A DNA stretch of 63,680 bases, filler included, from Octopus bimaculoides (lineage: Eukaryota): the NCBI RefSeq assembly GCF_001194135.2. It is 5 parts of 5 records of this genome, joined end to end, with 100 filler letters (N's around TTAATTAATTAA, not from the genome) between each part and the next. Parts side by side here need not be neighbours in the genome. Positions count along the whole stretch, not along the records: positions 34,249 to 62,543 come from NC_068982.1; 4 more parts are not named here. One strand, given 5' to 3'. Shown piece by piece: positions 8,032-62,495 of this stretch; position 1 is the first letter of the stretch; each line of letters starts with the position of its first letter. The position numbers and the translations under genes were made by a program. The notes below the pieces were generated by a model. It saw nothing but the letters and a program-made list of their open reading frames with translations, had not been told where the DNA came from and did no database searches.

Positions 8032-8257
8032 CTGAAACGAAAATGAAAACAAGACTTCTAGCTTAGAGGAAAAAAACAAAGGATAGACATTTTGTATTAA
8101 AATGACATCAACTTTAATCAACACTAGTGGTTCTTGTTTTAATGACTCTAAAGAGGTGAAAGTCTAACTAGGGCTACATCTTAGTATCTAATGAAATAAA
8201 AAAGGCCTCTGATAGAATATATAAGGCCTTTTATGACAACATACCAAATCGAATGTA

Positions 8258-36658: not shown

Positions 36659-36910
36659 CTCATCAGTGTTGGAGAGGAAGTACTTTTGTTTTACAATGAC
36701 AAACCATCATTTGATACTCTGGTGCAACTAATGCGATCTGAACGTCATCGCTCTGATGAGCGTAGTCCTCTAGCATACCACATCAATTTAGTACAGTTAC
36801 TAGCTTTGTGTACAGAAGGAAAGAATGTATATACAGAAATCAAATGTCACTCACTGCTGCCTTTAGATGATATTGTTAAAGTTGTGACTGATGTAAACTG
36901 TATTCCTGAG
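36659..36910 (+). CDS. ITPR: IP3 receptor internal exon: [14 protein letters not shown]...VNCIPE (84 aa)
   Basis: CAG/GTGAG, phase 0-0; [13 protein letters not shown] motif. Confidence 0.97.
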
Positions 36911-38701
36911 GTGAGTTACATATTTTTTTCAATCTTTGCTCAATTGCACAATTACTGGAGACTCTCTAAGTAGTTCACCATGTGTTTTTACCACCAAGAA
37001 ACTATATAAAATAAAATTTAGATGAACAATTTCCTTTTTAACAGACACAGGAAAAATGGGTCATTTTGCCGAAGAAAAAATTTCTTACTACTGTTAGTTG
37101 CTCTGGATTTGAAAAAGTTTAATCAGCTGTAGTTTAGAACTACAGAAGTATAATTAGTACATATCTAAGAATACAGAGTCAAACCTTTCTGCTATTGAGG
37201 TTTATTTAAATAGTCAATGATTGTTCAAAAATCTGTTAACTTCACTGAAACACTTAGTATTCAGTATCAAAATTTTCATCAAACTAACTGCAACATGATA
37301 ACTGATGCAGTTCCATTATGTAAAGTTAAGTTTTTGAATTTTTTTGAGTGACTAATGTGTCTTCTATGCTGTAACCATTTTAGCTTCATCACACAGTCTT
37401 AGATCAAATCACTTACTACACAATTTCATCTCTGAATTAATGATTGTTTTCTACTTTAAAATTGCTACTGTATCATTCATTGAATAATCCAAAGTTGAAT
37501 TGATTTCCAGTTAATACATACATCAAGAATATTGAATTCTTGTTTAACTGATTTACATATATACACATTAATCACTCCAGTTAAAATTATATACAAAGAA
37601 ACCAATGGATTAATCATTTAATCACAATGTACAAAAGAAATGTAGTAAATAAACTGAAAGATTGACTTTAAAGCCTCTAAGATATGTTTGATACTAAATT
37701 CACTTCTCACTTTATTTTTATTAAAACTAACATTTATCATAATCAGATATTGTCTACTCACATCTGGCTCAATGTCATGGATTGCCATTTCAGTCTTTCT
37801 TGTACTGTTCTCATATGTTCACTATATTTAAAGTCTTCCAGATTCTTGGTATTATCCCCACCACATAAATCTTGGGGTTTTTTCCTCTCTTCCATCTCTT
37901 CTTATTCATTTTGCCTTCTATCTACAATCTCTATAAAATATTTCTTCTAATTATGTGTTAATGATATTTTAGTTTTCTCTCTTTGATTGTATCTAATAAA
38001 GTTTTCTAAGTTTTTACTCCTTTTAGCACTTCATCTTTAGTTTTGTATTCTAAAAAGCTTTTTCTCAAAAGCTTTGAAGGTGATCTCATTTGTATATATA
38101 TCATTCAAGAAGATGTATAATGACTAAAGATGCTTCTCACTGTAAGCTAACCTTTTGGTAAGTTGTTTCCATGCTAGTTTTGTGTATTGAAATTGAAAAC
38201 ACAAAACTGATATCACAATAATTTGAAAGATCAGACTACCGTGAAAAAGTGCCTTTGGTCATGAAACATTTTCTTGAAGGACATGTGTACAAATGAGGTT
38301 ACTTTCACGTCTACAGTTATTGAGGAGAAATGAAAAATATATCATTGGATGTGTACTTATATAGATTAGCAAGATATACACTAGGTTAATTGCATTCTTC
38401 TAGCCATTGCCTCCATGAGAGGATACCTGGTGACCACCCTTAATGACACAATTGCAATAAATGCTGGCTGGAACTTTTTTTTAAAAAAGCAACATTTTGA
38501 TTGGACATCCATTTTGCTTTGGTGAAAGAGAAAAGTAACTGAACATGAAATAGATTTTACACCCCACACAATTGAAGTAGAATAAATGGGCCAATCCAAA
38601 TGACATTTAAAACTCCATTCAATTTTAATTAAATGTAATTATGTTTATATTTATTTATGTATGTCGTATAACAATCAACTCTAATGCTTTGTGTTTTGCA
38701 G

Positions 38702-38827: not shown

Positions 38828-40921
38828 GTAAGTAAATAAGGAATCTTTAGTTATAACTCCTATGTTTGCATTACGTTTACATCCTTACTTCTATTAACAT
38901 TGTGTCACTTGACTTCTTTCTTTCTTCAAAACCTTAATTTTAATCTTATATATAAATTTTGCGGTTGCTTATTTTTGTTTATATATATATATATATATAT
39001 ATATATGCTGCGTGAAAAAGTGCCACACCCTAACAGTTGAGGGAACCCGTGGAAGAGGTAGGNNNNNNNNNNNNNNNNNNNNNNNNNNNNNNNNNNNNNN
39101 NNNNNNNNNNNNNNNNNNNNNNNNNNNNNNNNNNNNNNNNNNNNNNNNNNNNNNNNNNNNNNNNNNNNNNNNNNNNNNNNNNNNNNNNNNNNNNNNNNNN
39201 NNNNNNNNNNNNNNNNNNNNNNNNNNNNNNNNNNNNNNNNNNNNNNNNNNNNNNNNNNNNNNNNNNNNNNNNNNNNNNNNNNNNNNNNNNNNNNNNNNNN
39301 NNNNNNNNNNNNNNNNNNNTTTCTAGCGAGATCGTTGCGAGTGCCCCTGGACTGGCTCTTGTGCGGGTGGCACATAAAATACACCATTTTGAGCATGACT
39401 GACCTTCGTGCTGGTAGCACGTAAAAGCACCCACTACACTCTCTGAGTGGTTGGTGTTAGGAAGGGCATCCAGCTGTAGAAACTCTGCCAAATCAGATTG
39501 GAGCCTGGTGTAGCCATCTGGTTTCATCAGTCCTCAGTCAAATCGTCCAACCCATGCTAGCATGGAAAGCGGACGTTAAACGTAAATGATGATGATGATG
39601 ATGATGATGATATATATATATATATATTAGTTCTACCAGAACTAGAGATCCTAGCAAAAAACCAAAGTCTTAATAAGTAGTAAGGCTGACAAATCACAAA
39701 CCCCTTCAGGTAGATGGCCCTGCTCAATCTGTAGAAAAAACATGGGCAGAAACTCCATATGATTTACTCTGTGTAAGCTATGGACACATAAAAAGTGCAG
39801 CAATATCAAAGGAAGGTTAACCAGGAAGATAGCTTTTGTGTGTAGCAGATGCACAGGGGCAATAAACGCTGAAGATGTACAGAAAACAGATTCCATCACA
39901 TGCCAGGGGGAAAAACTAGAAGTAGTTGATAACTCCCTTAGTTAATTTTAAACCTTATTTCAAACTTTTTGAGTAATATTCGAATTGGAGAAAGTGAGCA
40001 TTTCTTACCCCAACTATAATTATAAATATTATTTTCCTTCAATAATTTTTTAGTCATCATCATCATCATCATCGTCATCTTGAACATCAACATCGTTTTA
40101 CATTCATTTTCTCATGCTTGCATAAACAGGTTGGACAGGTTTTCTTCAATACAGCTTCTCAGCTCTTTTGATGTGATCATCTACTTTGTGAGGTTCAGCA
40201 TCCTGAAATTAGCTTTCACCACTTTTTCCCATACCATCTTTGATTGTCCTTTTTCATAGGTTCCTTCCACTTAGATCACTTGGCACTTTATGCAACTGAC
40301 ATCTTCATACATGTCATATGCTTATTCTATTCCAAGCCTCTCTTTCACATTATACCTTTTATACCCAGTTTTTCTTTCAGCCCAATTGCACTCCATGATT
40401 AATGCACAACCAGCAGAGCGTGCTCACTTCATTTCTTTCCAGTCTCCTCATATTCTTAACATTCTTACATTGGCATGAAGTCGAAAATTATAAGGGAGTG
40501 TATATTGGAGTCAATTAATGCCATTACATGACTATTGCTTACATTACTTTTTATCCCTTCAGAATCATGTAAAATCTTGTGACATTTAAACTCATAATAT
40601 AAAGAGGTGTTTTTAAATATCATAAGGAAGGAAAATAGATGGTAGAACCAGAGTTTATGGCTATTTTGTTAATGTTCTACTTCCAAGTTATACCACTATC
40701 AACTTTACCTCAATCCTTCCATAATTTTTAACAAAACGTTATGTTTGTTATCTCACAAAATTATTGTAGTTGTTTTAATATCATAAATTTGGTTATTGAT
40801 GTCATTATTGAAATCCTTATAGCATCAGTTGTAAGATTCAAAGATGTTTCTGGGTTGTGAAGGTTATGATGTTCGGTTTTATAACTGTTTATATAGTTAA
40901 TCCTTTCCCTTGTCTTTACAG

Positions 40922-42694: not shown

Positions 42695-43572
42695 CGAAGT
42701 AGTATCAAAAAGTTCTCAGATTAGTTATGTTTAATGAAGTTTTATCATCATCTCCTTTGAAATAGTCACCTTGTGCAGCAATACACCGGTCCCAGTGTTC
42801 CTGCCACTTTTGGAATCTGGCCTGGAAGTCATTTTCCGTAAGCAAGCCAAGGACCTTCTGCAATTCACTCTGGATCGGGACAGTGGTGTTAAAACAGAAA
42901 CCTTTGAGCTGCATTTGCATCTTGGAGAAGAGATGGAAGTTTGCAGGTGCTAAATCTGGTGACCAGGGTGGGTGCAGAAGAAATACCAAGTTGTTTTTGG
43001 TGAAAAACTTATGAGTGAGGAGCGTTCAGTGTCAGGGTGCATTGTTGTCATGAACAATCTGATTATTTACACTCCACAGATCTGGTTGCTTTTGTCGAAT
43101 GTCCTCCCTTAAATGCTTTAAAATGTCATTGATTGTCCTTCGACAATCTTCATGCACAAGCTGATAAATTTTCTCCACATTTCCAAGGATGACGCTCATG
43201 GCAGGTCTTCCAGGGACATTCTTCCACTTTTGAAGTGCCCACGCCACTCAAAACATTGCATACAACCCGTTGCCTCATCGCTGTAAGCTTGCCGAAGCAT
43301 GCTCAATGTCTCTGTTGCAGACTTCCCAAGTTTAATGCAAAATTTCACGTTGGCTCTTTGTTCCAACTTCCTGTCCGTGACAAAATTGCAGACTACAGCA
43401 TACATGTGATCACAAAAACACAAATTTCACAACTTGTGATGTAAACATGGCAATATCACTCGGCACACTGCCTCATGAAGGTCACTGCTAGCTCTCACTG
43501 TGCATGTAATTGTGTGCTGCCATCTGTAGGCATGCTACAGAACTAATCTGGAAACATTTTGATACCACCTTG
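42695..43572 (-). mobile_element. Internally deleted mariner transposon (878 bp)
   Basis: TA-flanked ~32-bp TIRs (CGAAGTAGTATCAAAAAGTTCTCAGATTAGTT / CAAGGTGGTATCAAAATGTTTCCAGATTAGTT); peptides EQRANVKFCIKLGKSATET, HDNNAP, HPPWSPDLAPANF, FQKWQEHWDRCIAAQGDYF. Confidence 0.92.
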
Positions 43573-49023: not shown

Positions 49024-49135
49024 ACTGATCAAGCACACAGAACGTTTACTGGAGGAGAAAGAGGAAAGATTATGTATCAAGGTACTTCAAACTTTGAAAA
49101 AAATGATGACTGTCGATATTGATTATGGGGAAAAG
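49024..49135 (+). CDS. ITPR: IP3 receptor internal exon: (R)[37 protein letters not shown]
   Basis: CAG/GTAAC, phase 2-0; ends at YGEK, the boundary that precedes the SII region in vertebrate ITPR1. Confidence 0.96.
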
Positions 49136-49505
49136 GTAACAATATGTTTTATATTATTTATCTATTTTACATAGTCAGCAATATATCATTTTTTTTTTGT
49201 TTTTTCAACATACCAAAGTATCCATGAAACATTCCATACTTTATGGTATACAAAATACCAGGAATGATGGACTATTGCATTGCAAATCTTATTATCTTGG
49301 ATGATTCCATCAGCATACTATGTCAGCTAAAGCCATTTTTAAAAGTCTTCAATTGCCTTTATTAGTCACTTATATTGTCTATATATGTCTGGAAAACAAT
49401 TACATTACTAACACATACTGTCTGTCAAAAAACTTATATAGACTTTGATTTTGTATAGACTGAGAATTAATAATTTTTCATCACTTTCTTCTTTATTTAG
49501 GAATT

Positions 49506-51067
49506 AAGGTATGTTATACACATTCGGTATATAGCCATAAGATTCATATTTCATGTTCTTTTTTCAGTGTGCTCAAAATTATACATTTAATCAGCCATAA
49601 CTCTACTACTGTCATTTTCTTTCCTTGGATGGTCTTATATCATGTTCAAATTTCTTTGAATGACTGAACAGTATTTTTACAAAGTAAAGTCGATATAGAA
49701 TCGATGAGTATAGTTTTCAAACAATATTGATTTCAATTTAAAGTCAATTATATTTAATAATCTCAATTGTTGACAATAAAATTGTACTTAATCTATTAGC
49801 AATAGAAATTGTGAAGGAGCTTTTTACTCAAGCATTTCATCATTACAGGAGCTTAAGTTTGAATATATCTTACAATTTATTTATCATATTTGATAGCAAT
49901 TTCAGGTTAATGGTGGTGGGTGTATTTAGAAAGCTCTGCTTAACCAAAATAGTAGCTTGAAATAATAACCGATATAAAATAGCTGGTGACAGGAATAATA
50001 GCCAATTTAATAATAGCTGGTGACATGCATATCCTGAAGATGCAGTTTGATTAATTGGTTGTCAAGTCACAAGTACAGTTTTGTATTTTGTGCCTGGTCA
50101 GCAACAATTGAGTTGACCTGTGATTACAGATGTTTCAGCTGTGACTATCCTACATTTCATTCAGATTATACCTCAGACAATATTTTATCCAATGTGTCCT
50201 GCCTTTTTAAAGATAGCAGGTTACAATATATGGAAGAATTTGGTATTTCTAGCAGGACCAATAACTATTTAGAGCCTCCCACATTAGCTCATAACAAGTA
50301 ATTATAAGTGCGGTCGGAGTTCTTTCGTTTTTGTTGAGCTGCATCTAAAATCATCAAACATGTCACCCCTAATATGTATTTGTCAAAGAATTAACTAAAT
50401 CTCTAGTAATATTCTAAGGGTGATTCAATTGCTGATGGATGTAATGTAGAGATTCATTGAGTTTATGAAAAGGATAATATAGAGAACTTAATTATGTCTA
50501 GCTCAGTGCTGAGGAAGTTGGCTTGGGTCAGATTTATTTAATGGTAATATGTAAAACCTTGTTTCTAAGCCTATTAGTCATATGTAGGTTGGACTCGTAT
50601 AATTTTAGTTGTCTATCAATGTAGCACAAACCTTCACCTATACCCATGAAATGGGTCCTCAGGCTGTGTAGAATACGCAATCTAATATGATCACTAAGTT
50701 CCACAGAGCCATTTGCCCACATGCTAAATGGATCCAAATAGATCCATAGTGAAGTACCATGATTTTTCTAGCATGTAAAATGATTTCAATGTCACCATCA
50801 TATGTAGAAGTGAAGGGTTTGGCACTTGTATGCTCCATTAATTAATGATTCATTAATAAGTGCATAGTAGTTCTCTAATGCACTTATAACTGAACTCAAG
50901 ATTATCAAAGCACTTATTTGAATAATACAATTTAATATAAATTTGATTGTGATATGAAGGGTGATATTAAAAAAATGTGAAGGTATGTTATACACATTCG
51001 GTATATAGCCATAAGATTCATATTTCATGTTCTTTTTTCAGTGTGCTCAAAATTATACATTTAATCA
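49506..51067 (+). repeat. Perfect 88-bp direct repeat (49506-49593 and 50980-51067)
   Basis: Both copies read aaggtatgttatacacattcgg...ttttttcagtgtgctcaaaattatacatttaatca with no mismatch. Confidence 0.9.
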
Positions 51068-54000
51068 TGCAAGATTTCATTAATACTTAGAAAATATATG
51101 AAAGCTGTGTGTGAATATACATGTGTGAAAATCTCTGGAAACCTAGAAGGCAATGCACAAAGGTGAATGAAAGATGATTGGTATGTTGTGTAGAAGAGGG
51201 AGAATTATATTTTGTGAAGTGGGTAAAGCTAACAGTGATTGAAAAATGCTGAATGAGCCTGTGTAGGACAACAGTTTTGAAAGGTAGTTTTTTAAAATTG
51301 TTATTGTATGATTTTATTGTAATATTGTCTTAGTGTAGTGCAACTCTTTATTATCAATTTCTCATGATTATTAGAAGAATTTTTATTAATTCTAATGTGC
51401 TGCCATCATTTGTTTTTTACCTTGATTATCACTTGAGGCACAATGAATAATTAATTCTTCATCCTTCATTAAATAGTCCCTAAGTCTTTAGTGATATTTT
51501 ATATTCATTTTTACTAACATATCCATGTGATTAAAAATGATGATAGTTTTACTAATGATGAAAAATAGTGCATCCACTGAAAACTGTGAGAAACCATTGA
51601 TAAATTTCTTACCTAAAGGCTATGCACTTTTTATTAAAGGGAAAAATATAATAATTAACTTGCGTGCATAAGCAAAAGCAGGGTATTGTAGTTGCTCATC
51701 TTTGTGTGTTTGCAAAATTACTAGAAAATGGCTGAACGGATTTTCACCAAATTTAGCAGAAATACTCATCAGGTGAGTGGCTCGAACTCATTATTTTGGT
51801 TTGATTATCTTCAAAACCAGCAGACGAATGAATCAAAATGTTTTTTTTTTTTCCTTTGTTTACATCTTCATAAACGATAAACCGGAGAAATAACTCTTGA
51901 TGTCATTTTGTTGAAATATGAATTCATCTGAGAATATATTTTTTAAATGAAATTTTATTTTATCCTTGTGTGCTCACAAGGTATGCATTGCCCCTCTGAC
52001 ACCTTTTTTTTTTTTGCATTCATAAATTCTTTTACATCTATGAAATTTTGGCAACACTATAATTTAGTGCTCTTCCAAATTTGTTTCCTCACAATTTTCT
52101 AATAGATGCACATTTTTCAATGAAATTTTGCAGAGATATATTTTCAAGGGTGTAGATTCTGATTATACTGATAAAAATTCTTTTAAAAAAAGTATTTTTT
52201 TAGGTGTTTTGGACCATTCCCTGCTTATTTGATTTTATTTCCTCATAACTCTATTTGAAATGCTTATTGTTTTGTCATTATGCAGAGATACATTTGCAAG
52301 AGTACTGAGTGTGTAATGCTACTGTTTCAAACATTAGAATGCTGAAAAAATGTGAAAAATACTAAATTACACAAATTGGTTATAACAAAAGTAGGGTGGT
52401 GCGAATGATCAAAAAATCCTAGATAAAATTATATTCATGTTCCCCTCTTTAGTTTTATTAGAGAGATGTGGTCACCCTTTGTTAGCAATAACTTTCCACA
52501 GCCCATCACTTTGACAGAGCTGCAATTCTGGATCAAACAAAGATTCAAACTGGACACTAGGCATCTTAGATGTTCCCAGACACTCACAACCCTTACCATC
52601 TGTGGATTGCAGCTGGAAGAGCTTCTACATTAATAGTTTACAGCAGACTAGTGCTGAGAAGGAAAGCTCAGAGTTTCTTGGAGAAAATTCAGGGTATCAA
52701 TGAGAATGTATTGGATGGTCTATTCTGGAAGATTTTCTGTGCTCAGAAACTATAGATGAGTTTTAGAAATCGTTGAACTGACCATGCTACCTAGGGTCAT
52801 TGCCATTTCAAGATAAACTCAACAGACACAAAAGTCCTATCAATTGGTAAGTCTGAGACACATACAGAGCAATGAAACTATTCTTCATGCATTCAGGTCT
52901 AAGCATTACTAACTTTTGTGTTTATGTTGAGCAACTGATGTTATATGTACAAAGGATCCTGTTGTCAACTGAGTTTATCATGAAAATTGGTTCTCTACTT
53001 TCCTTTAATCAAGGAAGAAAGGCAATGTTTCCCTTCTCATGGCTGTAAGGAAAGAGATTGTGTCATAGACATGACTGAAAGGACTGAAAACATACACTTT
53101 CTTCTTCTACCAAACCTTCATCAATTTTTTTTTTTTTTCCAATTCTGCATGGGAAAGAAAGTGAAGATAGAGAGAAACTATGGGAGGTGGGGGCTCTCTT
53201 CTAGTAAATTTGATAAAAGGTTGCTGACGGTATCAGACCCATCACAGGTGAATATACAGCATGCAGTTGTAGATAGGAGAATGCCTACAGATGTGCATTG
53301 GTAGCCAAGATGATCTGGGATCTGTGGCTTCATTGAGCAGCTGAAAGTGGTGGCCCTACTCTCTTGAAACTCTATTTCTCACACACACACACACATACAC
53401 ACACACAGTATATACTTTTAAATCATTTTATTTTGTTTGGAGGGGGTTCTTGCATCTATTTTCTATGTAAACCCATTCACCTTTTGTAACTTTCACCCTT
53501 CACCTTGGTGACAATTATAATCATCATCATCATTCGTACAAGCTTTCCCCACTCACCACTATTTTACATTACACTTATGATTACTCTTTAGACTTCAGCT
53601 CTACTACTATTATTCTTTTTATGGCAACCCCTACCCTCTCCACCCTGCCTTTTTCTTCCGTTTCCCCCTTTATTATATTAGAGTTGTCAAGGTTTTTTAG
53701 TTCAAATATAGCATAATGCACATTTAATAACCAACCTGAATGTCTGTATCACTTAGCTTTAGATGTGAGCAAAGAGACACTGTTTGGTCAGATGTAAATA
53801 ACAGTTCTATTGATAGAAAGTGAAATTCATTTTGTCATAACTGAAACAACATCCCAACTAGTGGCATTTTTTTCCTTCAAGACCAGAAGATACTTTAGAC
53901 CCCAACAACAGTTACTGATACTTCACAAAGCTCAGCAGAGGCTTTCAGCAAAGTATCGTTTACATATATATGAAAAGGTGTTGCTGCACACACACACACA

Positions 54001-55700
54001 CACACAACCTAGATTGCAATACGTCTCTCAATTTATTAGCATAAAATCACTTACAGATCGACAGACTTGCTGTTTCCTTTGCTCTGCTTTTCTACAACTA
54101 CTTTTATAAAGGCTTCTGCTCTTCAGTGTAGAGCAACACCTCCTCTTAGACATCTATGACCCACTTTCCTCTCTTCCTCACATCACCCTTGTTATATCCA
54201 ACCATACTGCTCCTGCACTAACTGTTAGATCCTGTCCTTCCCTTTCCGAATGTGACCCCCACTGGAGCTTCCTCCCTGCTTCTGTCTTTACTGCAAGTTG
54301 ACTTTCAATGGTTGCAGGCAAACGTTAAGGCACCCATCTCACTCTTTGAAGTGTATGAGTGTGTTTCTGCATGTGTGTGTGTGTGTGTGCATGCGTGTGT
54401 GTGCATGCGTGTGTATGTGCTTACAATTGCAAATGAGAAAAAATAGTACTCCATTTATTGAATAGATTTTATGTATATATATATATATATATATATAGCT
54501 GATGATTGACTCTAGTTACTTACAGTTTCACTTTAAACCAAGTATCTAGTGTATGAACAATGACTTAATATCATCGCTTAACGTCCGCCTTCCATGCTGG
54601 CATGGGTGGGACAATATTGTCAGTGGATCATATATCTGAAAAAGAAGCACACGCACATACATAAACGCATGCATACACACACAAACACAAACACACACAC
54701 GTCCATCTTGGCTAGTCTTAGTTACAAAACTAAGGGAGACCACTTTCCAGTTATGTACACAAATACATTTTGGTAGAGAGTTGATATATTTTTTGAGTAA
54801 CTACTTTGCAAGCGAGTGCTGATCTGTTTTCGTTTACTCTTCAGTATTCACCCCTAATGAGTTTCTGAGAGAGACTGAAATGGAGCAGCTCATCTCATAT
54901 AAATTCTCATATAAATTCAACTAAAATTTTTGTTGAATTTGTTAGCTGTTAATCCAATTTCCCTAGACAACTGGTTAATTGAATAATAATTAAACCTAAG
55001 GTGGTGAATTTAAAGACATCTGGTTAGGATTTAGGCTGGCAGTATTCCTGTGCAGAGCGGACCATGAATTCCACAGAAAAAAAAAAAATGGTTTCATTTT
55101 TATTTTTGAAGAGGAGGTAACTCTCCTTGCTTTAAAATTAGCAAGGGAGGTAATAGGTGAGCGAACGTAAAAAAATACATGGTAGAATGTTGAATTTTGG
55201 AAGTATGCATACGTTGATATATGTAAGAATCGAGTGTGGGTTGAAGGGGATACCACATATTACCAAGTGAGATGTAATATATGATAACATATGTAAAGCA
55301 TAAAGCTCACTGATAGGTCAGTATGGTGTGGAAACCCCAGCAGGATTGGAAATACAATCTGAGAAAGGGTAGAAACACTTCTCTTAGAGAAGACAAGTCA
55401 TCTGTATTTGGAGAAGAGGGAGGTGCCACCAATTTATGCAGACACTGATATGAACCTACAACCTCTTTCAGGCTGTGAATTTTGGATAAATATTTCGTTG
55501 TATGAGTACTTGCATGCATGTTTGGTAGTACATGTGAAAGAATGATTGCATGAATTTTGAATTAAAGTATATATGTTAACATACACACACGTCATCCAAT
55601 TAATTTCATCCAAATTATTTCATTTAATTTTATCTTAATTTCAAATATATTAAGTTACATCTTTATAACAGATTCAGTTTGTAGTTGGTGGTGTTATTTT

Positions 55701-55971
55701 TGAAAAGTAACAGTTATCACCTCAACATGTTTGTTCCATACAGAACACTGTTACTACTCCTTTTAACTCCAGGAGGACATCTCCTCCAGCTGGTTAACAA
55801 CACACTATCTGTGTCTGTTATATTGCAAACAAGGGAGTGAACAACTCCCATCTAGCGTTGACAGGAACTAATACACCAGCTGGAGGAGATGTCCTCTTTT
55901 GGTTAAAAGGAGTAGTAACAGTGTTCTGTATGGAACAACCATGTTGAGGTGGTAACAACCATTACTTTTCA
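55701..55971. mobile_element. Foldback/MITE with ~95-bp inverted arms
   Basis: 55701-55793 is the near-perfect reverse complement of 55876-55971; shares the gacatc-tc-ccagctgg...caaggg core with the 35.2-kb element. Confidence 0.8.
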
Positions 55972-58019
55972 GTAGAGTTACTACTTGCATCTCGTATAGA
56001 GATTTTAGAACTAGCTACTTGGCTTACTGGTATTTTTTTAAATTTTTTTATATATACCTAATACCTGTGAGTTGTGTTATAGTGAATCATTTGGAGAGAG
56101 CTAAACTCTGCAGCCTGATTTAACCTTGATAATGTACTTGATGATAAATTCCTTGCAGATACCTAAATGCCCAGCTGATCACATAGTATCTTCATATTCT
56201 TCTTATAATAATTCGTAAAATTTGTGTAAAATTTAATTTCATTATGAATTCTATTTATTGAATGATAAGTGGATTAAATTTCTGTGATAGAAAAACCATT
56301 TATTTATTATATGATGCTGAAGTTTTTATTTTATTCTTTTAAATAAGACTGGTTGTCCTTTTGTGATATTGGGCTCAACAGCTGAATTTAGATGCACCAC
56401 TTTGTCAAAGTGAATAAAATTTCTTAGAATTATGTGTGTTTGTTTACTATGTCTTAACAAAGGATATTTATTGTTAGTGGGTATATGACCAAACCAAACT
56501 ATTTCCCTTTTAATATTGCAGTTATTTTAATGAAATGTCAATAGAATTTCCTCATCTTTAGTATCCTTGGATGACAACTTTAACTCTGACACCACTGCTC
56601 ATTATTACTTTTAAATTAATTTACCAATATTGTTTAAAATAATGTATTTCAAAACCTCTTTACATAAATTAAATTTGCTTGGTTTACACCTATCTCGTCT
56701 GCAATATACGAATGGCATGACAAATTTAGATTAATATACAATGGCATGGTTTAATATATATAAAGATGACTTAACATAGATCAAGTTGACTTCATGTGTA
56801 TTCACTTAGATTAATACTTATTGAAATGGCTCAATGATTCAAATTATTTTGTAAGTACTATGAGATTTGGCATTTATTAGAATGGTTTAACATACACAAA
56901 GACAGTAATTTCCAGACTGTCAACTTCATTTTTAGAGTGTATATATTACAATATACACATGCGCGTACACACACACACAAACACACACACATTAATTCAA
57001 TTAGTTCAATCATTAACCATCAAGTATCTTATTCCTGAGTATTTACTGGATTTTAACTAGGAATCTTTATAAAAAATTATAATCTTAATAGCAATTTGTA
57101 ATTACATTAGAATGACCTAAAATAATTTGAACATGTTAGTAAATTACATATGCATGAATTATAAAATGAAAACAAGTTACTATGTGAGACTTGTGCTTGG
57201 GTGTTATAGTTTGTAGATAATTACAGTCAGTTGATGCAGAGGTTCTATATGTCTATCCAATCATCTAATTACTGTATTTAGAAAGAGCTGATCTGTCATC
57301 AATTAGGCATATTTTCCTTAGATTCAGAGCATTAAGTCTATGGTCTGCATTTTGATGATAATAAAATGTTCTTGGGAAAGATTTGATAATCGCTTTTTTT
57401 TTCTTTTTTTTTTCTTTTAGCTGTATTGATCAAGAAGAGTGACTATATAGAAATTTCTATCACTCATTTGTTAAGTTTAATTATACATGACAATAAATGA
57501 GCTGTGGATAAAGATTTGTTTCAACTGGAAGACAAAGTAACTGTATATGAGTTATTATATGTAAAATGTGAATAAAAGGTTTAGTTATGAGTTGATAAAG
57601 CAAATAGGTTTGGAAAGATGACTATGACAGTATAGAATTGTAATGTATACAAGATGACACTTGTTTACATTTTGCTTCTTCTCACAGAACCGTTTGAGCA
57701 AATCACTGATGTTTTATGTTTGCATTTTCCCCTTTTCATTCTATGTCATGTAGTTCTAGGCTTTTGAAGATGTGGAATAAAAATCCACTGCTTGAAATAT
57801 TACATCTGGTCTTTCCTAAGACTATACAATACAGGTATGTCATTATTTGTGGCCTGAAAGTTGTTTGCAGTGCCTCATCATCATTGGGTGATATTGACTC
57901 ACATACCCATGTGCACATTAAGAAGTTTTTGTCATTTCATAATCTTGTGTTGTTACCTCTCTAATAGTATTGATGTGTGGTTGCATTGGCAGGATATAGT
58001 TTGGTAAACTGTCTAGTGT

Positions 58020-58215
58020 GGAGGAATATGGCTTAGTGGTTAGGGTGTTGGACTCATGATCATAAGATTGTGGGTTCAGTTCCTGGACTGGGCGACGTGT
58101 TGTGTTCTTGAGCAAAACACTTCATTTCATGCTGCCCCTGTCTACTCAGCTGGCAAAAATAAGTTATCCTGTGATGGATTGTCATCTCATCCAGGGTGAA
58201 ATATGTACGCCATGG
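58020..58215 (+). mobile_element. tRNA-derived SINE
   Basis: A box tggcttagtgg, B-box-like gggttcagttcc, then gttgtgttcttgagcaaaacact. Confidence 0.7.
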
Positions 58216-59648
58216 AAACTGGGAAACCAGCTATATGAGTTTATACGACTCAGAAAGGATCTTTATTATGTATAAATTATTTAGACATTCTACCAAATTT
58301 GTCTATGAAGATGCTCCTTATATCTCTTTCTTTTATTTTAATATGCTGCTTTAGTTTTTGTTAACTGTTTCTGGCTAGAAATTATAAATGGCAAGAAACA
58401 AATCCCATGTGTATGTGTGTACAGATTTTATAGTGATATATATTAATTAAACAAGAAAGTATCCAGAAGCTGGAGAAATATTCTTTATTACTCATCATAC
58501 ACTTTTAACACTTTCATTCTTTACAGAATTCTTCAAAAATTGCAGGCTATTGTGCATGTTGCTTTATATGTGTGTGAGAGATGTAAACTGATTGTTGGAA
58601 ATTGTCAGGAATTCAAATTAAGCTTAATAAATGTTTTGGGCTTGGACAAAAAGTGTGTTTTGAGAGTGCCAGTTAAGCTGTTTGACCTCTTATTTGTTAT
58701 TTTGAATCCATGTCTATGTGTATGGGTTAATGCTTAAACAAAGGATAAATTAGTTTGCGGGGAAGACTGGTTTTTGAAGCAGTTTGCATAACATCTTTGT
58801 CCAAAAGTGCCAGCTGTTCATTAGTTTCAGTATATGTAAAGGGATGTCAGCTGTTTCTTGAAGAAAGAGACCAACAGATTTCTGGAATGACTGCTTTCAG
58901 GACAGGACTATCCAGATAGACATATGTTAATTATGCGCATATATCGTCGTTTAATGTCTGTTTTCTATGCTGTGTGTGTGTATAAATTAGTAACAATGTA
59001 CAGTAAGATCCATGATGGTAGAATCCAAAGAGTATAAAGTTCCAATGCTTATCTGGGTGGAGTGGTGGTAAAGTGGTTCAGGTGAGGTGGCAAATGTCTG
59101 AGAAGGTACACACACATATGCCAAACATATATGTGGTTAAGAACTTTGCCTCCCAATAACTTAGTTTTGGGTTCAGTTCCACTGCATGACACCTTCGGCA
59201 AGTGTCTTCAACTATAGCCCTGATCTGACCAAAGCTTTATGAGTTGACTTGGTAGATGGAAACTGAAAGAAGTTCACCAAATATATACATATGTGTGTAT
59301 ATATTCAGGTGTGTATAGTATGTACATGGGTGTGCATAAGTGTGTATATGTATATACATGTGTGCATAAGTGTGTATATGTTTGTACCCATTGCAATTGT
59401 GGTAGTATTAAATTAAAAATAGTCATCTAACTATTGTACTTAATGCAAATACACAATTGATAAGACTGTTACTGCAGTATTCATCCTGAGATAACATCCT
59501 TTATGGATGTACTGCATTAACAAGACACTAAATATTAGGGGGAGATTTCATATATGGCTTCCTGCTAGAATGATAGAGTGCCATTTATGATTAAACATAA
59601 ATATAGTCTTTCATACAGCATATGTGTGTGTGTGTGTGTGGAGAGAGA

Positions 59649-59684
<36 letters not shown>

Positions 59685-59877
59685 AAAGAGAGGAGGTATA
59701 AGATGAATAAATATATTTCACCAGTTGACATCCATATAACGATGATCATTTCACAGCCTTTATCATAGAAAAACAATGTATTTTAGTGTTTCATAAATAA
59801 TAAAGTTTTTTGCATGCCTTTATTAATGTATATAATATAAATTATATAGTACAGATGTATAATTTATAAATTAATAC

Positions 59878-60019
59878 AGGTAAAAAAATAGCTTACTCAT
59901 CAGATCATGGTTACTTTCATTCATCAACACAATACATATATGTATGTATGTATGTATTGTGTTGATGAATGAAAGTAACCATTATATTCTTTGACCTGAT
60001 GAGCAAGCATTTTTTACCT
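59878..60019. repeat. Long hairpin/inverted repeat
   Basis: Perfect 31-bp arms 59908-59938 and 59951-59981 around a 12-nt (TATG)3 loop; outer imperfect arms of ~29 bp. Confidence 0.85.
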
Positions 60020-60126
60020 CTATTAATTTATATACATACAAATACTGGGATTGATTCATTCGACTAAAAATTCTTCAAGGCAGTGCCCCAGCATGGATGC
60101 AATCTAATGATTGATACAAGCAAAAG

Positions 60127-60183
<57 letters not shown>

Positions 60184-61879
60184 GATTTTAAATTTTGCAA
60201 CAATTGTTTCTGTAAAAATCTTTATTTACTGTAAGTACAACATGATAGTTTGGATTACATCATACATTTAGTAGTTCTCAGGCTCATCAGATATTATTTA
60301 AAATTGGGGTGAACAATGACTTGTTGGAACACCATTTTGTATTTTAAACTTGTTATCTAGTTCAATTCTGAATACTGTACCCTTATTTGAATCCTTATAC
60401 CATAAATATTCATATTCAATAATTAATTTCTTGCCTCACATATAACTTAGGCAACCTGATATTACTGTAGTGACTATGAATAATCTAAATACTGAGGCCA
60501 TGCCATAACTCATATATGATAATGAACAATATAGTTTAATACAATAATTTTAGCTGTTAATCAAATATTGAAATCTTCATAATAACTGTCTTATTCACAT
60601 CTAACCACTCAATATAATCTTTAAAGAGATTTGCTCTCGTATTAAGATCACATTATACCAAAATAAATATGTCAAATATTAAATATTTATAACTAAGTAT
60701 ATTAATTTTAGTATTTGAGGTGTTTGTACTTGCTATCCTCTTACCTTTTTTGTTTACATTGTTTTAGTCATCACTTTTTGATGACAAGAAACAAGCACAC
60801 ATACTCATGCATACATAATCACCTTCCACACACACACACACACACTATAACTATACAGAATATTTCTTACTTCACATGAACTGAGATGGTTTGCATATTG
60901 ATCTGAGTTTGGTAAAGATTAAGAAATTATTAATACACTAACATAAGCATGAAAATGATTATGTTCTATATATCAAAATATATTTGTTTGTTTAAAGTAT
61001 AGATTTAATGTGAAATGAACCCTGGAGTATTTTCATGCTGTGTATTTGTTGTGTGTGTGTGTGTGTGTGTTTGTGTGTGTGTGCATACATACACAGCTTT
61101 TCGCTGTCGGATCATTTGACTGTATATTAAGATGTTTTCTCTAATGTTAACCAAATATGGTTAGCACTTACTTTTTGTCAAGCAAAATGAAACAAGGAAA
61201 GCTATGTTCCTTACTCAAATGTATGCTATAATGATTGTTGTAAGATTTAAATTTATGATTATGCAATGTGTTTCTCAACATCTCAAACTTTCAGCTATTA
61301 TTATGCTCTTGTAAAATGAATATATATTTAATGTATGTGAATATGTGTTTGTGTATGTCTATAGATGTTTTTCAGCAACAATTTGGTGACACATCACTTC
61401 TACGCTTCTCTAAACTTTCACTTGTGAGACTGGGAAAGGATTGTAGTGCTTGGGGAATCCTTGAAACTCCAACAAACCACTGTATATCATCCTTTGTAAA
61501 TTGATAAAATCTTACCTTATTATGAATGTCTTGTGTGTGCGTGTGTGTGTATGTGTGTGTGTGTAAGATGTGAGGTTATATTAGATATAATTGTTTCATT
61601 AAATATGTTTCCTTGATTTAAGGAATCAATGTCACGTTTCTAGTGCAACCACTAAACTGCTTCTGTAAAAAATGTTGTTTTCATTAGCTGTTTCATTATT
61701 CCAATGCCATGCATGTGGAAAGGATTTAGTATTTTTTTTTTTTGTCAATTTCAAAAACACTCAATTGAACTGTTGTATTAGTGTCCCTTTATCCCTTATC
61801 TTCCCAACCTAGTCATTACCTATCCTATCCTTCAAACTAATAAACTGTTATACACCTTTCCTTTGCTGCCCATCGTAAG

Positions 61880-61927
61880 GTGGACCTGAAGGCACTTAAT
61901 AAGACAGAGCTTGATGACCACAGACGG
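61880..61927 (+). CDS. ITPR: Putative IP3 receptor 48-nt cassette exon VDLKALNKTELDDHRR (SII-C-like)
   Basis: CTAAT branch-like site, pyrimidine tract, AAG acceptor, CGG|GTAAG donor; phase 0-0 compatible with the YGEK exon; LDDHRR resembles ITPR1 SII-C LEDHKR. Confidence 0.65.
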
Positions 61928-62495
61928 GTAAGCTATTGTTGTGTGTTAGCCTACTTTTGGATGCATGCTATAATCCTCCCAAATGTTATTTTATTGTTAA
62001 TGTTTGTTTTGTTTTTTTGTTTTTCATTTCCCCCTTACAATCTTCTATGTAAATCTATTGCTGCATCTTTCTTAATTATCCCATGCTTATTTATCAAATT
62101 AGTCAATTACACACCTGACTCCATCTGCCAGTTCTATAATTTAGCTGAATAGAAACAAAAATTGCTGACTTTCACTTGAGATTAATTTCTACATCTCATC
62201 CTATCCCCAGACAGAATATCACTGTTACTAAGTCATAGTTTTTATCATTCAGTCTCAAATTGTTTCAGAAAATTTATTGTAAAAGAGTTTGTGTTTTTTT
62301 TTTTTTACGTTTTTTTTTTTTTGTCTTTTCTGTTTTGGATTTTTTGAAGGTCAACACCATTTCATTCAAAAAATGAATCTGTTGCACTGTTTTTTTATTC
62401 AGCTTGCAGTCTTGTGAATTCTCACTTTATATTCTTAGCTGAAATTTCCTTCTTCATTTCTTTGCTTTCTTTTCTTCTGAGTTTGATAAATACCG

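What the first reader, a model, noticed from the sequence alone, without database searches (positions are those of the whole stretch)
61880..61927. Mollusc ITPR cassette exon resembling the neuron-specific SII-C segment of vertebrate ITPR1
Seen: 12.7 kb after the exon ending ...DYGEK there is an isolated 48-nt phase 0-0 exon with good splice signals encoding VDLKALNKTELDDHRR. A TGCATG (Rbfox) motif lies 34 nt downstream (61962-61967) and another at 61710-61715. Established (from memory): vertebrate ITPR1 has the alternatively spliced, neuron-enriched SII insert right after YGEK, with sub-segments A/B/C of 23/1/16 aa, and C ends in LEDHKR before GEALRQ. Inference: same position, same 16-aa length, same phase and a similar C-terminus (LDDHRR) suggest either an ancient bilaterian neural splice switch or convergence in cephalopods.
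Basis: partly seen in the sequence, partly recalled or inferred. Interest (0 to 1): 0.82.

Follow-up and report, generated by a model that had tools for sequence, protein, structure and literature searches.

The report
Ancient IP3-receptor cassette exon (SII-C)
A 48-base optional exon in an IP3-receptor calcium-channel gene is real, is fully included in some samples and fully skipped in others, and is the invertebrate counterpart of the classic brain-type SII-C insert of mammalian ITPR1, so the exon is much older than vertebrates.

Summary
Window 61880-61927 is a 48-nt, phase 0-0 exon (VDLKALNKTELDDHRR) lying 12,744 nt after the ...DYGEK exon.

RNA assemblies join GEK|cassette|GEALRQ at exactly the predicted sites in some runs. 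Other runs of the same studies join GEK|GEALRQ directly. It is therefore a switch-like cassette exon.

The exon is not cephalopod-specific. The same intron holds a 48-nt exon of related sequence in 11 unnamed invertebrate genomes and in an arthropod-like contig. Saccoglossus (hemichordate) has a 51-nt version and the fish Liparis a 48-nt one. Mouse SII-C is a 48-nt 'Neural' exon. A profile of the invertebrate exons, scanned over 49,907 natural 16-mers including a whole bird ITPR1, ranks SII-C first and in exact register.

Orthology with SII-C, and an origin before the protostome-deuterostome split, are therefore well supported. Copepods lost the intron.

Two points are not established. Neural specificity in this species could not be tested because tissue labels are coded. 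Rbfox control is doubtful because TGCATG is not conserved across species. What is conserved is a weak AAG acceptor, UGCU motifs just upstream and a strong GTAAG donor.

Interest is moderate to high.

The parts
49024..49135 (+). Constitutive upstream exon (112 nt) encoding (R)[37 protein letters not shown]. It ends in phase 0 and is followed by GTAACA.
   Evidence: sequence. RNA contigs cover it in every run laid. It matches ITPR1 in the PDB at E=2.5e-38.
49136..61879 (+). The 12,744-nt intron between the GEK exon and the cassette. No other exon in it was used in the runs examined.
   Evidence: GEK is joined either directly to the cassette or directly to the GEALRQ exon. The candidate-exon scan finds nothing else similar.
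61845..61879 (+). 3' splice region: pyrimidine tract, TGCTGC at 61864-61869, and a weak AAG acceptor (61877-61879).
   Evidence: TGC is 19 observed against 4.5 expected in 11 species. TGCT is the top 4-mer in an unbiased scan: 8 of 11 species, P=1.4e-5, Bonferroni 0.004. AAG acceptors occur in 10 of 15 species.
61880..61927 (+). Cassette exon, 48 nt, phase 0-0, VDLKALNKTELDDHRR. Ortholog of vertebrate ITPR1 SII-C.
   Evidence: Inclusion contigs: X25, X35, X40-42, X57, X58, X52, X29. Skipping contigs: X26-28. Orthologous exons in other genomes. pN/pS 0.24. Profile tests.
61928..61933 (+). Strong 5' splice site, CGG|GTAAGC.
   Evidence: GTAAG follows the exon in all 12 unnamed-invertebrate and window copies and in Saccoglossus.
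61962..61967 (+). TGCATG (Rbfox-type hexamer) starting 35 nt downstream of the cassette. Possibly functional in this lineage, but not conserved across phyla.
61710..61715 (+). Second TGCATG, 170 nt upstream of the cassette. There is no evidence of function.

Best explanation
This is a genuine, switch-like cassette exon of an IP3-receptor (ITPR) gene, and it is the ortholog of the SII-C exon of vertebrate ITPR1.

What it does to the protein. Inclusion inserts 16 charged residues, consensus VD[LIV]K.M[ST]KKE[LI][ED]DH[RK]R, between ...DYGEK and GEALRQ.... By homology with ITPR1 this is a flexible loop of the regulatory (coupling/ARM3) region. In the orthologous loci and in vertebrates it lies about 20-25 residues before a conserved RR[DE]S kinase site.

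How old it is. The exon predates the protostome-deuterostome split. Vertebrates later added the SII-A exons (33+36 nt) and the 3-nt B acceptor in front of it. Some lineages, copepods among them, lost the intron and with it the exon.

How it is probably controlled (inferred). A weak AAG acceptor and a strong GTAAG donor make the exon depend on trans-acting factors. UGCU/UGC motifs within about 35 nt upstream of the acceptor are the conserved regulatory handle. They could mark an SRRM (eMIC)-type activator, or relief from a YGCY-binding repressor of the MBNL type. Either would give all-or-none tissue choice.

What the choice probably changes (inferred from vertebrate SII). The insert most likely tunes phospho-regulation or partner binding of the channel rather than its core gating.

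Shown: the exon is real, its junctions are exact, it is either included or skipped, its position, length, phase and peptide are conserved, and the upstream motif is enriched. Inferred: the regulator, neural bias, and the biochemical consequence.
For: 1. Gene identity. The exons match ITPR1/2/3 in the PDB (E=2.5e-38) and the RIH domain.

2. Cassette behaviour.
- X25, X35 and X40-42 contigs run GEK -> cassette -> GEALRQ without a break, at depth 11-106.
- X26-28 contigs run GEK -> GEALRQ, at depth 13-33.
- X36-38, from the same study as X35, hold the upstream exon but have no cassette contig.
- The cassette's 31-mers occur in RNA runs of five organism labels and eight studies.

3. Conservation.
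- A 48-nt AG|..|GTAAG exon lies in the same intron in L001-3, L005-7, L009, L010 and L024-26.
- L034, with arthropod-like flanks, has GELKTITVEELEDKIR, 48 nt.
- Saccoglossus kowalevskii has a 51-nt ITEIQNLTKKQQEDSKR, scoring 31.8 against 0.9 for the next independent candidate.
- Liparis tanakae has a 48-nt LLDQDQPEKLLENQKR.
- Mouse SII-C is 48 nt.

4. Purifying selection. pS is 0.87 and pN 0.21.

5. Orthology test.
- Profile scores are owl SII-C 26.7 (best of 49,907 natural 16-mers, next 19.0), mammal 16.2 (P=2e-4), L034 27.5 and Saccoglossus 32.4.
- The C-terminus LEDHKR in L007 is identical to the mammalian one. LEDHRR in L009 and L010 is identical to the owl one.

6. Regulatory constraint.
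- The cassette is 48/48 identical in four related organism labels, while the flanking exons differ at 5 of 60 positions, all third codon positions.
- TGC and TGCT are enriched upstream.
- AAG acceptors occur in 10 of 15 species.

7. A conserved RR[DE]S follows the junction in the orthologous loci and in mammals.
Against: - Tissue identity of the including and skipping samples is unknown, so a neural bias is not shown.
- An attempt to type samples by A-to-G editing found no differences.
- The window does not contain the downstream exon. Its first 10 residues come only from RNA contigs.
- No RNA evidence was obtained for the predicted exons outside the window's own group of related species.
- The fish exon scores only weakly against the invertebrate profile (P about 0.007-0.05).
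- In the dataset read, the mouse SII exons are listed as 'Neural', not as eMIC-dependent. SRRM dependence is therefore not supported on the vertebrate side.
- UGCU fits MBNL-type motifs as well as it fits SRRM4.
- Insect-like loci (L032/L033) and bryozoan-like loci (L013/L014) keep the intron but show no recognisable cassette.
Confidence: 0.8

Rival explanations
1. Convergence. Unrelated 48-nt exons were recruited independently from the same long phase-0 intron in vertebrates and in invertebrates, and they resemble each other only because of splice-site and charge constraints.
For: - The terminal R or K codon (AGG/CGG/AAG before GT) is favoured by the 5' splice-site consensus.
- The N-terminal halves differ: ELEPSPPL in mammals against VDLKSMTK.
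- The fish exon is only weakly similar.
- Fly and mouse neural exon programmes are largely rewired.
Against: - Length is 48 nt in 14 of 15 species, and phase and position are always the same.
- Hemichordate and arthropod-like forms are intermediate.
- LEDHKR and LEDHRR are identical between invertebrates and amniotes.
- SII-C is the single best hit, in register, among 49,907 natural 16-mers.
Confidence: 0.07
2. The exon is orthologous to SII-C, but in this animal its switch is not neuronal. It could be developmental, muscle- or gonad-specific, or specific to a neuronal subtype. On this view neural regulation of SII is a vertebrate acquisition.
For: - No tissue label could be read.
- The 2026 comparative study infers only two neural exons as bilaterian-ancestral.
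- The including runs are not uniformly the most complex transcriptomes. X25 is the smallest of its study.
Against: - Use is all-or-none between samples, as expected for a tissue switch.
- At least four including and three skipping runs were seen in each of two multi-sample studies.
- The UGC-rich weak acceptor with a strong donor is the signature reported for neural SRRM-dependent exons. That attribution is from my own knowledge of the literature and was not tested here.
Confidence: 0.3
3. Inclusion is driven by Rbfox binding the downstream UGCAUG.
For: TGCATG starts 35 nt downstream of the exon, a position typical of Rbfox enhancement. The chance of one within 50 nt is about 0.03.
Against: - Only 1 of the 10 other species examined has TGCATG within 300 nt downstream.
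- No downstream k-mer is enriched.
- The conserved signal lies upstream of the exon.
Confidence: 0.2
4. Artefact: an assembly chimera or intron fragment rather than a spliced exon, or a constitutive exon that was mis-assembled as skipped.
For: The evidence is from assembled contigs (Logan), not raw reads, and contigs drop minor variants.
Against: - Independent contigs from 9 runs, 5 organism labels and 6 studies show identical junctions.
- Skipping contigs 6.5-8.5 kb long, at depth 13-33, pass cleanly through GEK|GEALRQ.
- The exon is conserved under purifying selection.
Confidence: 0.02

Closest known systems
Vertebrate ITPR1 SII-C segment (mouse exon MmuEX0024736; [16 protein letters not shown] in mammals, ELDQSLPQRQLEDHRR in barn owl)
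   Same: - It lies in the same intron, between ...YGEK and GEALRQ.
- It has the same phase 0-0 and the same 48 nt / 16 aa.
- It has the same C-terminal motif, [EQ]L[ED]DH[KR]R.
- It is used as a cassette.
- It lies upstream of the conserved RR[DE]S site.
   Different: - The N-terminal half differs: VDLK.M.K against ELEPSPPL.
- Here it is the only optional segment, with no A exons and no 3-nt B acceptor.
- Skipping gives DYGEKG rather than the vertebrate GYGEKG (GxGxxG) motif.
- Neural enrichment is documented for mouse and was not testable here.
Vertebrate ITPR1 SII-A (33+36 nt) and SII-B (alternative acceptor, +3 nt)
   Same: They are optional sequence in the same intron and at the same protein site.
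   Different: - No counterpart was seen. RNA joins GEK directly to the cassette.
- No AG lies 3 nt upstream of the acceptor.
- No convincing A-like exon was found even in the fish locus.
- They are most simply read as vertebrate additions.
Drosophila Itpr (Itp-r83A) 27-nt eMIC-dependent neuronal microexon DmeEX0004837 (PMC8797185)
   Same: It is a neuron-regulated short exon in the same regulatory loop region of the same gene family. It depends on an SRRM-type factor, which is the mechanism proposed here.
   Different: It is 27 nt, not 48. Translating the published RT-PCR primers places it roughly 15-35 residues downstream of the GEK|G junction. That is my inference, not a mapped position. It is therefore probably a different, parallel exon.
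Bilaterian-ancestral neural microexons of APBB1/2/3 and MADD (preprint 10.64898/2026.09.05.749416)
   Same: They are alternative exons whose position and length are conserved between protostomes and deuterostomes.
   Different: - They are 6 and 9 nt and are shown to be neural in vertebrates, insects and outgroups.
- This exon is 48 nt and appears lost or unrecognisable in the insect-like loci examined.
- Its neural use outside vertebrates is unproven.

Membership tests
IP3 receptor (ITPR) gene | Sequence homology to ITPR regulatory region / RIH domain | tested here: met
   PDB ITPR1 E=2.5e-38, with ITPR3 and ITPR2 also hit. Pfam RYDR_ITPR (RIH) E=2.4e-10 on upstream exons of the window.
ITPR1 SII-C exon orthogroup | Located in the intron between the ...YGEK exon and the GEALRQ exon | tested here: met
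   Genomic position. RNA junctions GEK|cassette|GEALRQ.
ITPR1 SII-C exon orthogroup | 48 nt, phase 0-0 | tested here: met
   48 nt in the window and in L001-3, 5-7, 9, 10, 24-26, L034 and Liparis. 51 nt in Saccoglossus. Mouse 48 nt.
ITPR1 SII-C exon orthogroup | Alignable peptide similarity to SII-C | tested here: met
   Invertebrate profile against owl SII-C: 26.7, best of 49,907 natural 16-mers and in register. Mammal 16.2, P=2e-4. Fish weak, P about 0.007-0.05.
ITPR1 SII-C exon orthogroup | Alternatively spliced (cassette) | tested here: met
   Inclusion-only contigs in X25, X35 and X40-42. Skipping-only contigs in X26-28.
ITPR1 SII-C exon orthogroup | Neuron-enriched inclusion | not testable with these tools
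   Run, sample and organism names are coded and no library text is on record. The editing proxy was uninformative.
Full vertebrate SII module (A+B+C) | Companion A exons (33+36 nt) and B (alternative acceptor 3 nt upstream) | tested here: not met
   GEK is joined directly to the cassette in all including contigs. The acceptor context cgtaag|G has no AG at -4/-5.
Full vertebrate SII module (A+B+C) | Skipping creates the glycine-rich GYGEKG (GxGxxG) motif. Its role as the SII-minus-specific ATP site is from my memory of the literature. | tested here: not met
   The skipped junction reads DYGEK|GEALRQ in the window and in the DIDYGEK-type loci. The vertebrate junction reads RGYGEK|GEALRQ.
Rbfox-enhanced exon | (U)GCAUG within about 300 nt downstream, conserved among orthologs | tested here: inconclusive
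   Present at +35 in the window (chance about 0.03 for 50 nt). Absent in 9 of the 10 other species, with no downstream k-mer enriched.
SRRM3/4 (eMIC)-dependent neural exon | UGC-containing motifs just upstream of a weak 3' splice site, with a strong 5' splice site (features as I recall them from the literature) | tested here: met
   TGC 19 against 4.5 expected, MC P<1e-5. TGCT in 8 of 11 species, Bonferroni P=0.004. AAG acceptors in 10 of 15 species and GTAAG donors in 13 of 15. In the four loci found afterwards, TGC occurs in 3 of 4.
SRRM3/4 (eMIC)-dependent neural exon | Loss of inclusion when the eMIC factor is removed; neural restriction | not testable with these tools
   No perturbation data exist for this species. 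The mouse SII exons are listed as 'Neural', not eMIC-dependent, in the table read.

The most novel reading that the evidence does not exclude
The ITPR SII-C exon is a neuron-biased splice switch inherited from the bilaterian ancestor and still read out through a UGC-motif / SRRM (eMIC)-type mechanism in molluscs and vertebrates. It would be a third, and much longer, ancestral neural exon beside the APBB and MADD microexons. It would also mean that neuron-specific tuning of IP3-receptor regulation predates the independent evolution of large brains in cephalopods and vertebrates.
Probability: 0.3. Interest if true: 0.78.

Novelty: new member of a known kind. Interest (0 to 1): 0.6.

Why it matters
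SII is one of the oldest textbook examples of neuron-specific splicing of an ion channel, and it has been treated as a feature of vertebrate ITPR1.

- **Evolutionary history of SII.** Its C segment turns out to be an ancient exon with conserved length, phase and peptide motif, invariant at V1, D2, E10, H14 and R16 among the VD-type invertebrate copies. Across protostomes and deuterostomes, that identifies the ancestral core of SII. The A and B segments and the GxGxxG site then look like vertebrate additions.
- **A functional target.** The small conserved peptide can be probed in IP3R-null cells.
- **Splicing evolution.** Recent large comparisons find almost no alternative exons shared between vertebrates and protostomes: two neural ones in the 2026 preprint, and four same-position exons between fly and mouse. 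A 48-nt exon with conserved regulatory architecture (weak AAG acceptor, UGCU motifs, strong donor) is a tractable case. It can test whether the regulation, and not just the exon, is ancestral.
- **If the switch is not neural in this animal.** It would then be a clean example of an old exon re-used by different tissue programmes.

Tried and rejected
I used loose ends at each exon instead.
2. Typing samples as neural by A-to-G editing failed. The other showed no differences in exon 36660-36914 in either including or skipping runs, which is inconclusive.
3. Three searches of the 5.8-billion-protein collection returned only exon-level ORF fragments and no spliced invertebrate isoform carrying the cassette. 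The representative search likewise returned none. Those fragments were nevertheless what led to the genomic loci.
4. Looking up the window ORF that starts at the cassette found nothing on record.
6. Naming the unnamed ENA/JGI/JAAU contigs did not work. Cluster look-ups gave names only for Saccoglossus, Tyto alba, Polypterus, Bugula and some fishes. A distance tree on 153 aa is dominated by rate differences and does not place them.
7. A full-text search for the peptide strings found no paper. Papers on SII biochemistry were not held. The Nova2 preprint concerns a different Itpr1 NMD exon.
8. YCAY (Nova) clusters, inspected by eye only, were not enriched near the exon in the window, so I dropped that idea.
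9. I did not run a structure prediction. The downstream exon is not in the window and sequences from other loci are not accepted by that tool, so the insert would sit at a chain end.

Full report
**1. The observation**

- The exon 49024-49135 encodes (R)[37 protein letters not shown] and is followed by GTAACA.
- After an intron of 12,744 nt comes ...cctttgctgcccatcgtAAG | GTGGACCTGAAGGCACTTAATAAGACAGAGCTTGATGACCACAGACGG | GTAAGC.
- That exon is 48 nt, phase 0-0, and encodes VDLKALNKTELDDHRR (61880-61927).
- TGCATG stands at 61962-61967 and at 61710-61715.

The gene is an IP3 receptor. The concatenated exons match ITPR1, ITPR3 and ITPR2 chains in the PDB (best E=2.5e-38). Upstream exons of the piece hit the RIH domain.

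- The SII+ sequence [49 protein letters not shown] matches PDB chains 7lhe and 3jav residue for residue.
- A published exon table lists mouse Itpr1 exons of 33, 36 and 48 nt between the two constitutive exons, all labelled 'Neural'. The 48-nt exon has an alternative acceptor 3 nt upstream. This corresponds to A = 33+36, B = +3 and C = 48 (supplement of PMC8797185).

**2. The exon is used, and it is a cassette**

Public RNA assemblies of the source organism (coded 'organism A') were laid on the two exons.

Runs that include the exon:
- In run X25, a 2.6-kb contig reads ...GATTATGGGGAAAAG|GTGGACCTG...AGACGG|GGTGAGGCTCTACGACAGAGTCTGTTGACAA, that is GEK|cassette|GEALRQSLLT.
- Runs X40, X41 and X42 (study P3) and X35 (study P16) have the inclusion form at depth 68-106.

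Runs that skip it:
- In X26, X27 and X28 of the same study as X25, contigs of 6.5-8.5 kb read GEK|GGTGAGGCT..., skipping the exon.
- X36-38 of study P16 hold the upstream exon but have no cassette contig.

The exon's 31-mers are held by RNA runs of five organism labels in eight studies. At least four such runs occur in each of four studies.

So the exon is chosen in an almost all-or-none way between samples. In X35 there are also two minor continuations after the cassette. One leads to an unknown sequence with an in-frame stop (depth 8.8 against 130). The other is a retained intron (depth 5.4).

I could not learn which tissues include the exon. Run, sample and organism names are coded and no library text is on record. 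An attempt to recognise neural samples by A-to-G editing in a 255-nt constitutive exon found no differences in any run.

**3. It is not a cephalopod peculiarity**

ORF fragments holding the ...DYGEK exon led to genomic contigs of other animals. In every case I scanned the intron between the GEK exon and the G[ED].LR exon for open AG...GT intervals.

A 48-nt exon stands out by a wide margin in eleven unnamed marine or metagenomic contigs:

| Locus | Peptide |
|---|---|
| L001 | VDLRTMTKKELDDHRR |
| L002 | VDLKSMSSHEIDEHTR |
| L003 | VDLKVMSKLEIDEHTR |
| L005 | VDIKTLSKKELDDHRR |
| L006 | VDVKSMTKKEFEDHRR |
| L007 | VDLKSMTKKELEDHKR |
| L009 | VDLKSMSKKELEDHRR |
| L010 | VDIKSMTKKELEDHRR |
| L024 | VDFKIMSKKEIDDHRR |
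| L025 | VDVRSLTRKEYEDHKR |
| L026 | VDVKSMTKKEFEDHRR |

These animals are far apart. Their flanking 150 residues are as little as 66-70% identical. Synonymous sites of the exon are saturated (pS 0.87) while pN is 0.21, so the peptide is under purifying selection. Residues V1, D2, E10, H14 and R16 are invariant.

Other lineages:
- L034, a contig with arthropod-type flanks (AIDNEYGEK / GDVLRNFLLVRYFG), has a 48-nt GELKTITVEELEDKIR with ctgcag| and |gtagga.
- In the hemichordate Saccoglossus kowalevskii (L011, GCA_000003605.2), the 1.75-kb intron holds a 51-nt ITEIQNLTKKQQEDSKR. It scores 31.8 against 0.9 for the next independent candidate among 46. The RefSeq model of that gene instead reads five intron-encoded residues from a +15 donor.
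- In the fish Liparis tanakae (L004), a 48-nt LLDQDQPEKLLENQKR lies 1.2 kb before the GEALRQ exon.
- In the copepod Caligus rogercresseyi (L008) and in copepod-like contigs, GEK and GDSLR are in one exon, so both intron and cassette are absent.
- Insect-like loci (L032/L033) and bryozoan-like loci (L013/L014; compare Bugula) keep the intron, but I found no similar exon.

**4. Orthology with SII-C**

Position, phase and length agree. Sequence agrees as well.
- L007 ends ...LEDHKR, like mammals.
- L009 and L010 end ...LEDHRR, like the barn-owl ITPR1 isoform X8 (ELDQSLPQRQLEDHRR).

I built a position profile from the eleven VD-type exons, with no vertebrate sequence in it.
- The best hit of all is the owl SII-C segment in exact register (26.7; next best 19.0).
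- Mammalian SII-C scores 16.2 (P=2e-4 against natural 16-mers, 0.002 against its own shuffles).
- L034 scores 27.5 and Saccoglossus 32.4.
- The fish scores only 6.8 (P about 0.007-0.05).

The similarity is concentrated in the C-terminal half. Part of the terminal R/K could be imposed by the donor consensus, but the E/D-D-H core cannot. I conclude that SII-C and this exon descend from one exon that existed before protostomes and deuterostomes split.

The vertebrate A exons and the B acceptor have no counterpart here. GEK is joined directly to the cassette, and there is no AG three bases upstream of the acceptor. No convincing A-like exon was found even in the fish locus. They are best read as later additions.

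**5. How it is probably controlled**

- In the window its chance expectation within 50 nt is about 0.03.
- Of the ten other species examined, only one has TGCATG within 300 nt downstream.
- An unbiased k-mer scan finds nothing enriched downstream.

The conserved signals lie elsewhere.
- TGC occurs 19 times, against 4.5 expected, in the 30 nt before the acceptor in 11 species (Monte-Carlo P<1e-5).
- TGCT is the top 4-mer of 256: 8 of 11 species, P=1.4e-5, Bonferroni 0.004.
- In four loci found after this hypothesis was formed, 3 of 4 again have TGC.
- Ten of 15 species use the normally rare AAG acceptor. Thirteen of 15 have a GTAAG donor.
- Among four related organism labels the cassette is 48/48 identical, while the 60 flanking exon bases shown differ at 5 synonymous positions. 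The chance of no change at the cassette's 16 third positions is about 0.01. This fits overlapping splicing signals.

A weak acceptor with nearby UGC motifs and a strong donor is, as I recall the literature, the architecture of exons activated by SRRM3/4 (the eMIC domain). The fly Itpr gene has an eMIC-dependent 27-nt exon in the same loop region. Translating its RT-PCR primers suggests that exon lies some 15-35 residues further downstream, so it is probably a parallel exon, not the same one. That is my inference.

UGCU is also a YGCY (MBNL-type) motif, so repression outside the including tissues is an equally simple reading. The mouse SII exons are labelled 'Neural', not eMIC-dependent, in the table read. 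The regulator is therefore inferred, not shown.

**6. What the insert probably does**

It adds a charged, probably helical 16-mer to the regulatory loop. In the orthologous loci it lies 20-25 residues before a conserved RR[DE]S...GEALRQSLLTRYYGKSHPRARRDS in L001. Mammals have ...GNIRPSGRRESL.

From my knowledge of the vertebrate literature, not re-read here, SII status changes PKA phosphorylation, ATP sensitivity and calmodulin binding of IP3R1, in part because skipping creates GYGEKG. In the window and its DIDYGEK-type relatives the skipped junction is DYGEKG, so that particular site is not formed. The ancestral role is more likely modulation of phospho-regulation or of a binding partner through the conserved E..DH.R face. 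This is inference.

**7. Comparison and novelty**

Structurally this exon is a member of the SII-C exon orthogroup. It fails the tests for the full vertebrate SII module, having no A or B segment and no GxGxxG.

I found no paper containing these peptide strings.

Two recent comparative studies set the context.
- The fly-mouse comparison found only four same-position eMIC exons, Itpr not among them.
- A 2026 preprint that includes an octopus species inferred only two neural exons (APBB, MADD) as bilaterian-ancestral. Its criteria require insects, and this exon would fail them.

The exon itself is very likely present in automated isoform annotations. What is new is the recognition of its deep orthology and of its conserved splice-site architecture.

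**8. Verdict**

The exon is ancient and SII-C-like. 'Neural' was not tested, and Rbfox control is doubtful.
- It is a new member of a known kind, with interest about 0.6.
- Interest would rise to about 0.78 if tissue-labelled data show neuron-specific inclusion.

Noticed in passing
window 42705-43423 (minus strand): Remnant of a mariner/Mos1-type transposase inside an ITPR intron. The ORF 43196-43423 hits Pfam HTH_48 (E=1.4e-5). The adjacent ORF 42705-42989 looks like the C-terminal part but gave no Pfam hit.
   Followed up: partly
window 39063-39319: Assembly gap (run of N) inside an intron of the gene. TA and CA microsatellites are frequent in the piece, and they caused tool filters to refuse long stretches.
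   Followed up: no
after window 61927 (sequence not in the window); run X35: A minor RNA form joins the cassette to CATTGTATTTTCTGTTGATAAG..., which gives an in-frame stop after five codons (depth 8.8 against 130 for the normal junction). This may be a poison exon or a cryptic site further downstream. The same run also shows a retained intron after the cassette at depth 5.4.
   Followed up: partly
L011 8177-8191 and 8679-8729 (Saccoglossus kowalevskii GL011201.1): The RefSeq model XP_077868992.1 reads GEK+VGANN from a donor 15 nt into the intron and omits the conserved 51-nt exon ITEIQNLTKKQQEDSKR predicted here. The model may represent a minor or wrong junction. A TGCATG lies 57 nt after the GEK exon (8233-8238).
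   Followed up: partly
flanking exons versus cassette in runs X52 and X58 (organisms L and M), laid on window 61760-62060: The cassette is identical at all 48 bases, while the 60 neighbouring constitutive-exon bases shown differ at 5 synonymous positions. Synonymous sites of the cassette appear frozen within this group of species.
   Followed up: partly
L008 12664-12831 (Caligus rogercresseyi); L015, L016, L021: Copepod and copepod-like genes have GEK and GD[ST]LR fused in one exon, so the intron is lost. L022 has only a 54-nt intron at this position.
   Followed up: yes
L032/L033 (insect-like) and L013/L014 (bryozoan-like, compare Bugula neritina KAF6037981.1): The intron at the SII position is present (0.7-2.4 kb), but no exon resembling the cassette was found. 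It is either lost or diverged beyond recognition.
   Followed up: partly
L002 13935-14862: The same candidate ORF recurs five times, at spacings of 230, 230, 230 and 202 nt. This indicates a tandem repeat array of roughly 230-nt units inside the intron downstream of the cassette. The same locus carries LINE-type RT/endonuclease ORFs upstream.
   Followed up: no
Drosophila Itp-r83A exon DmeEX0004837 (literature, PMC8797185 supplement): The fly gene has a 27-nt eMIC-dependent neuronal exon. Translating its RT-PCR primers (QVNLPA... / ...ISGPGY) suggests it lies slightly downstream of the GEK|G junction in the same loop. This looks like parallel evolution of neural inserts in one loop.
   Followed up: partly
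P0173 (Polypterus senegalus) and P0174 (Tyto alba): SII-A varies among vertebrates: ITIELDNAE|LPQSPETESSVE in owl and LISFDDELDVTE in bichir. SII-C keeps QLEDH[KR]R. This is consistent with C being the older, more constrained part.
   Followed up: no
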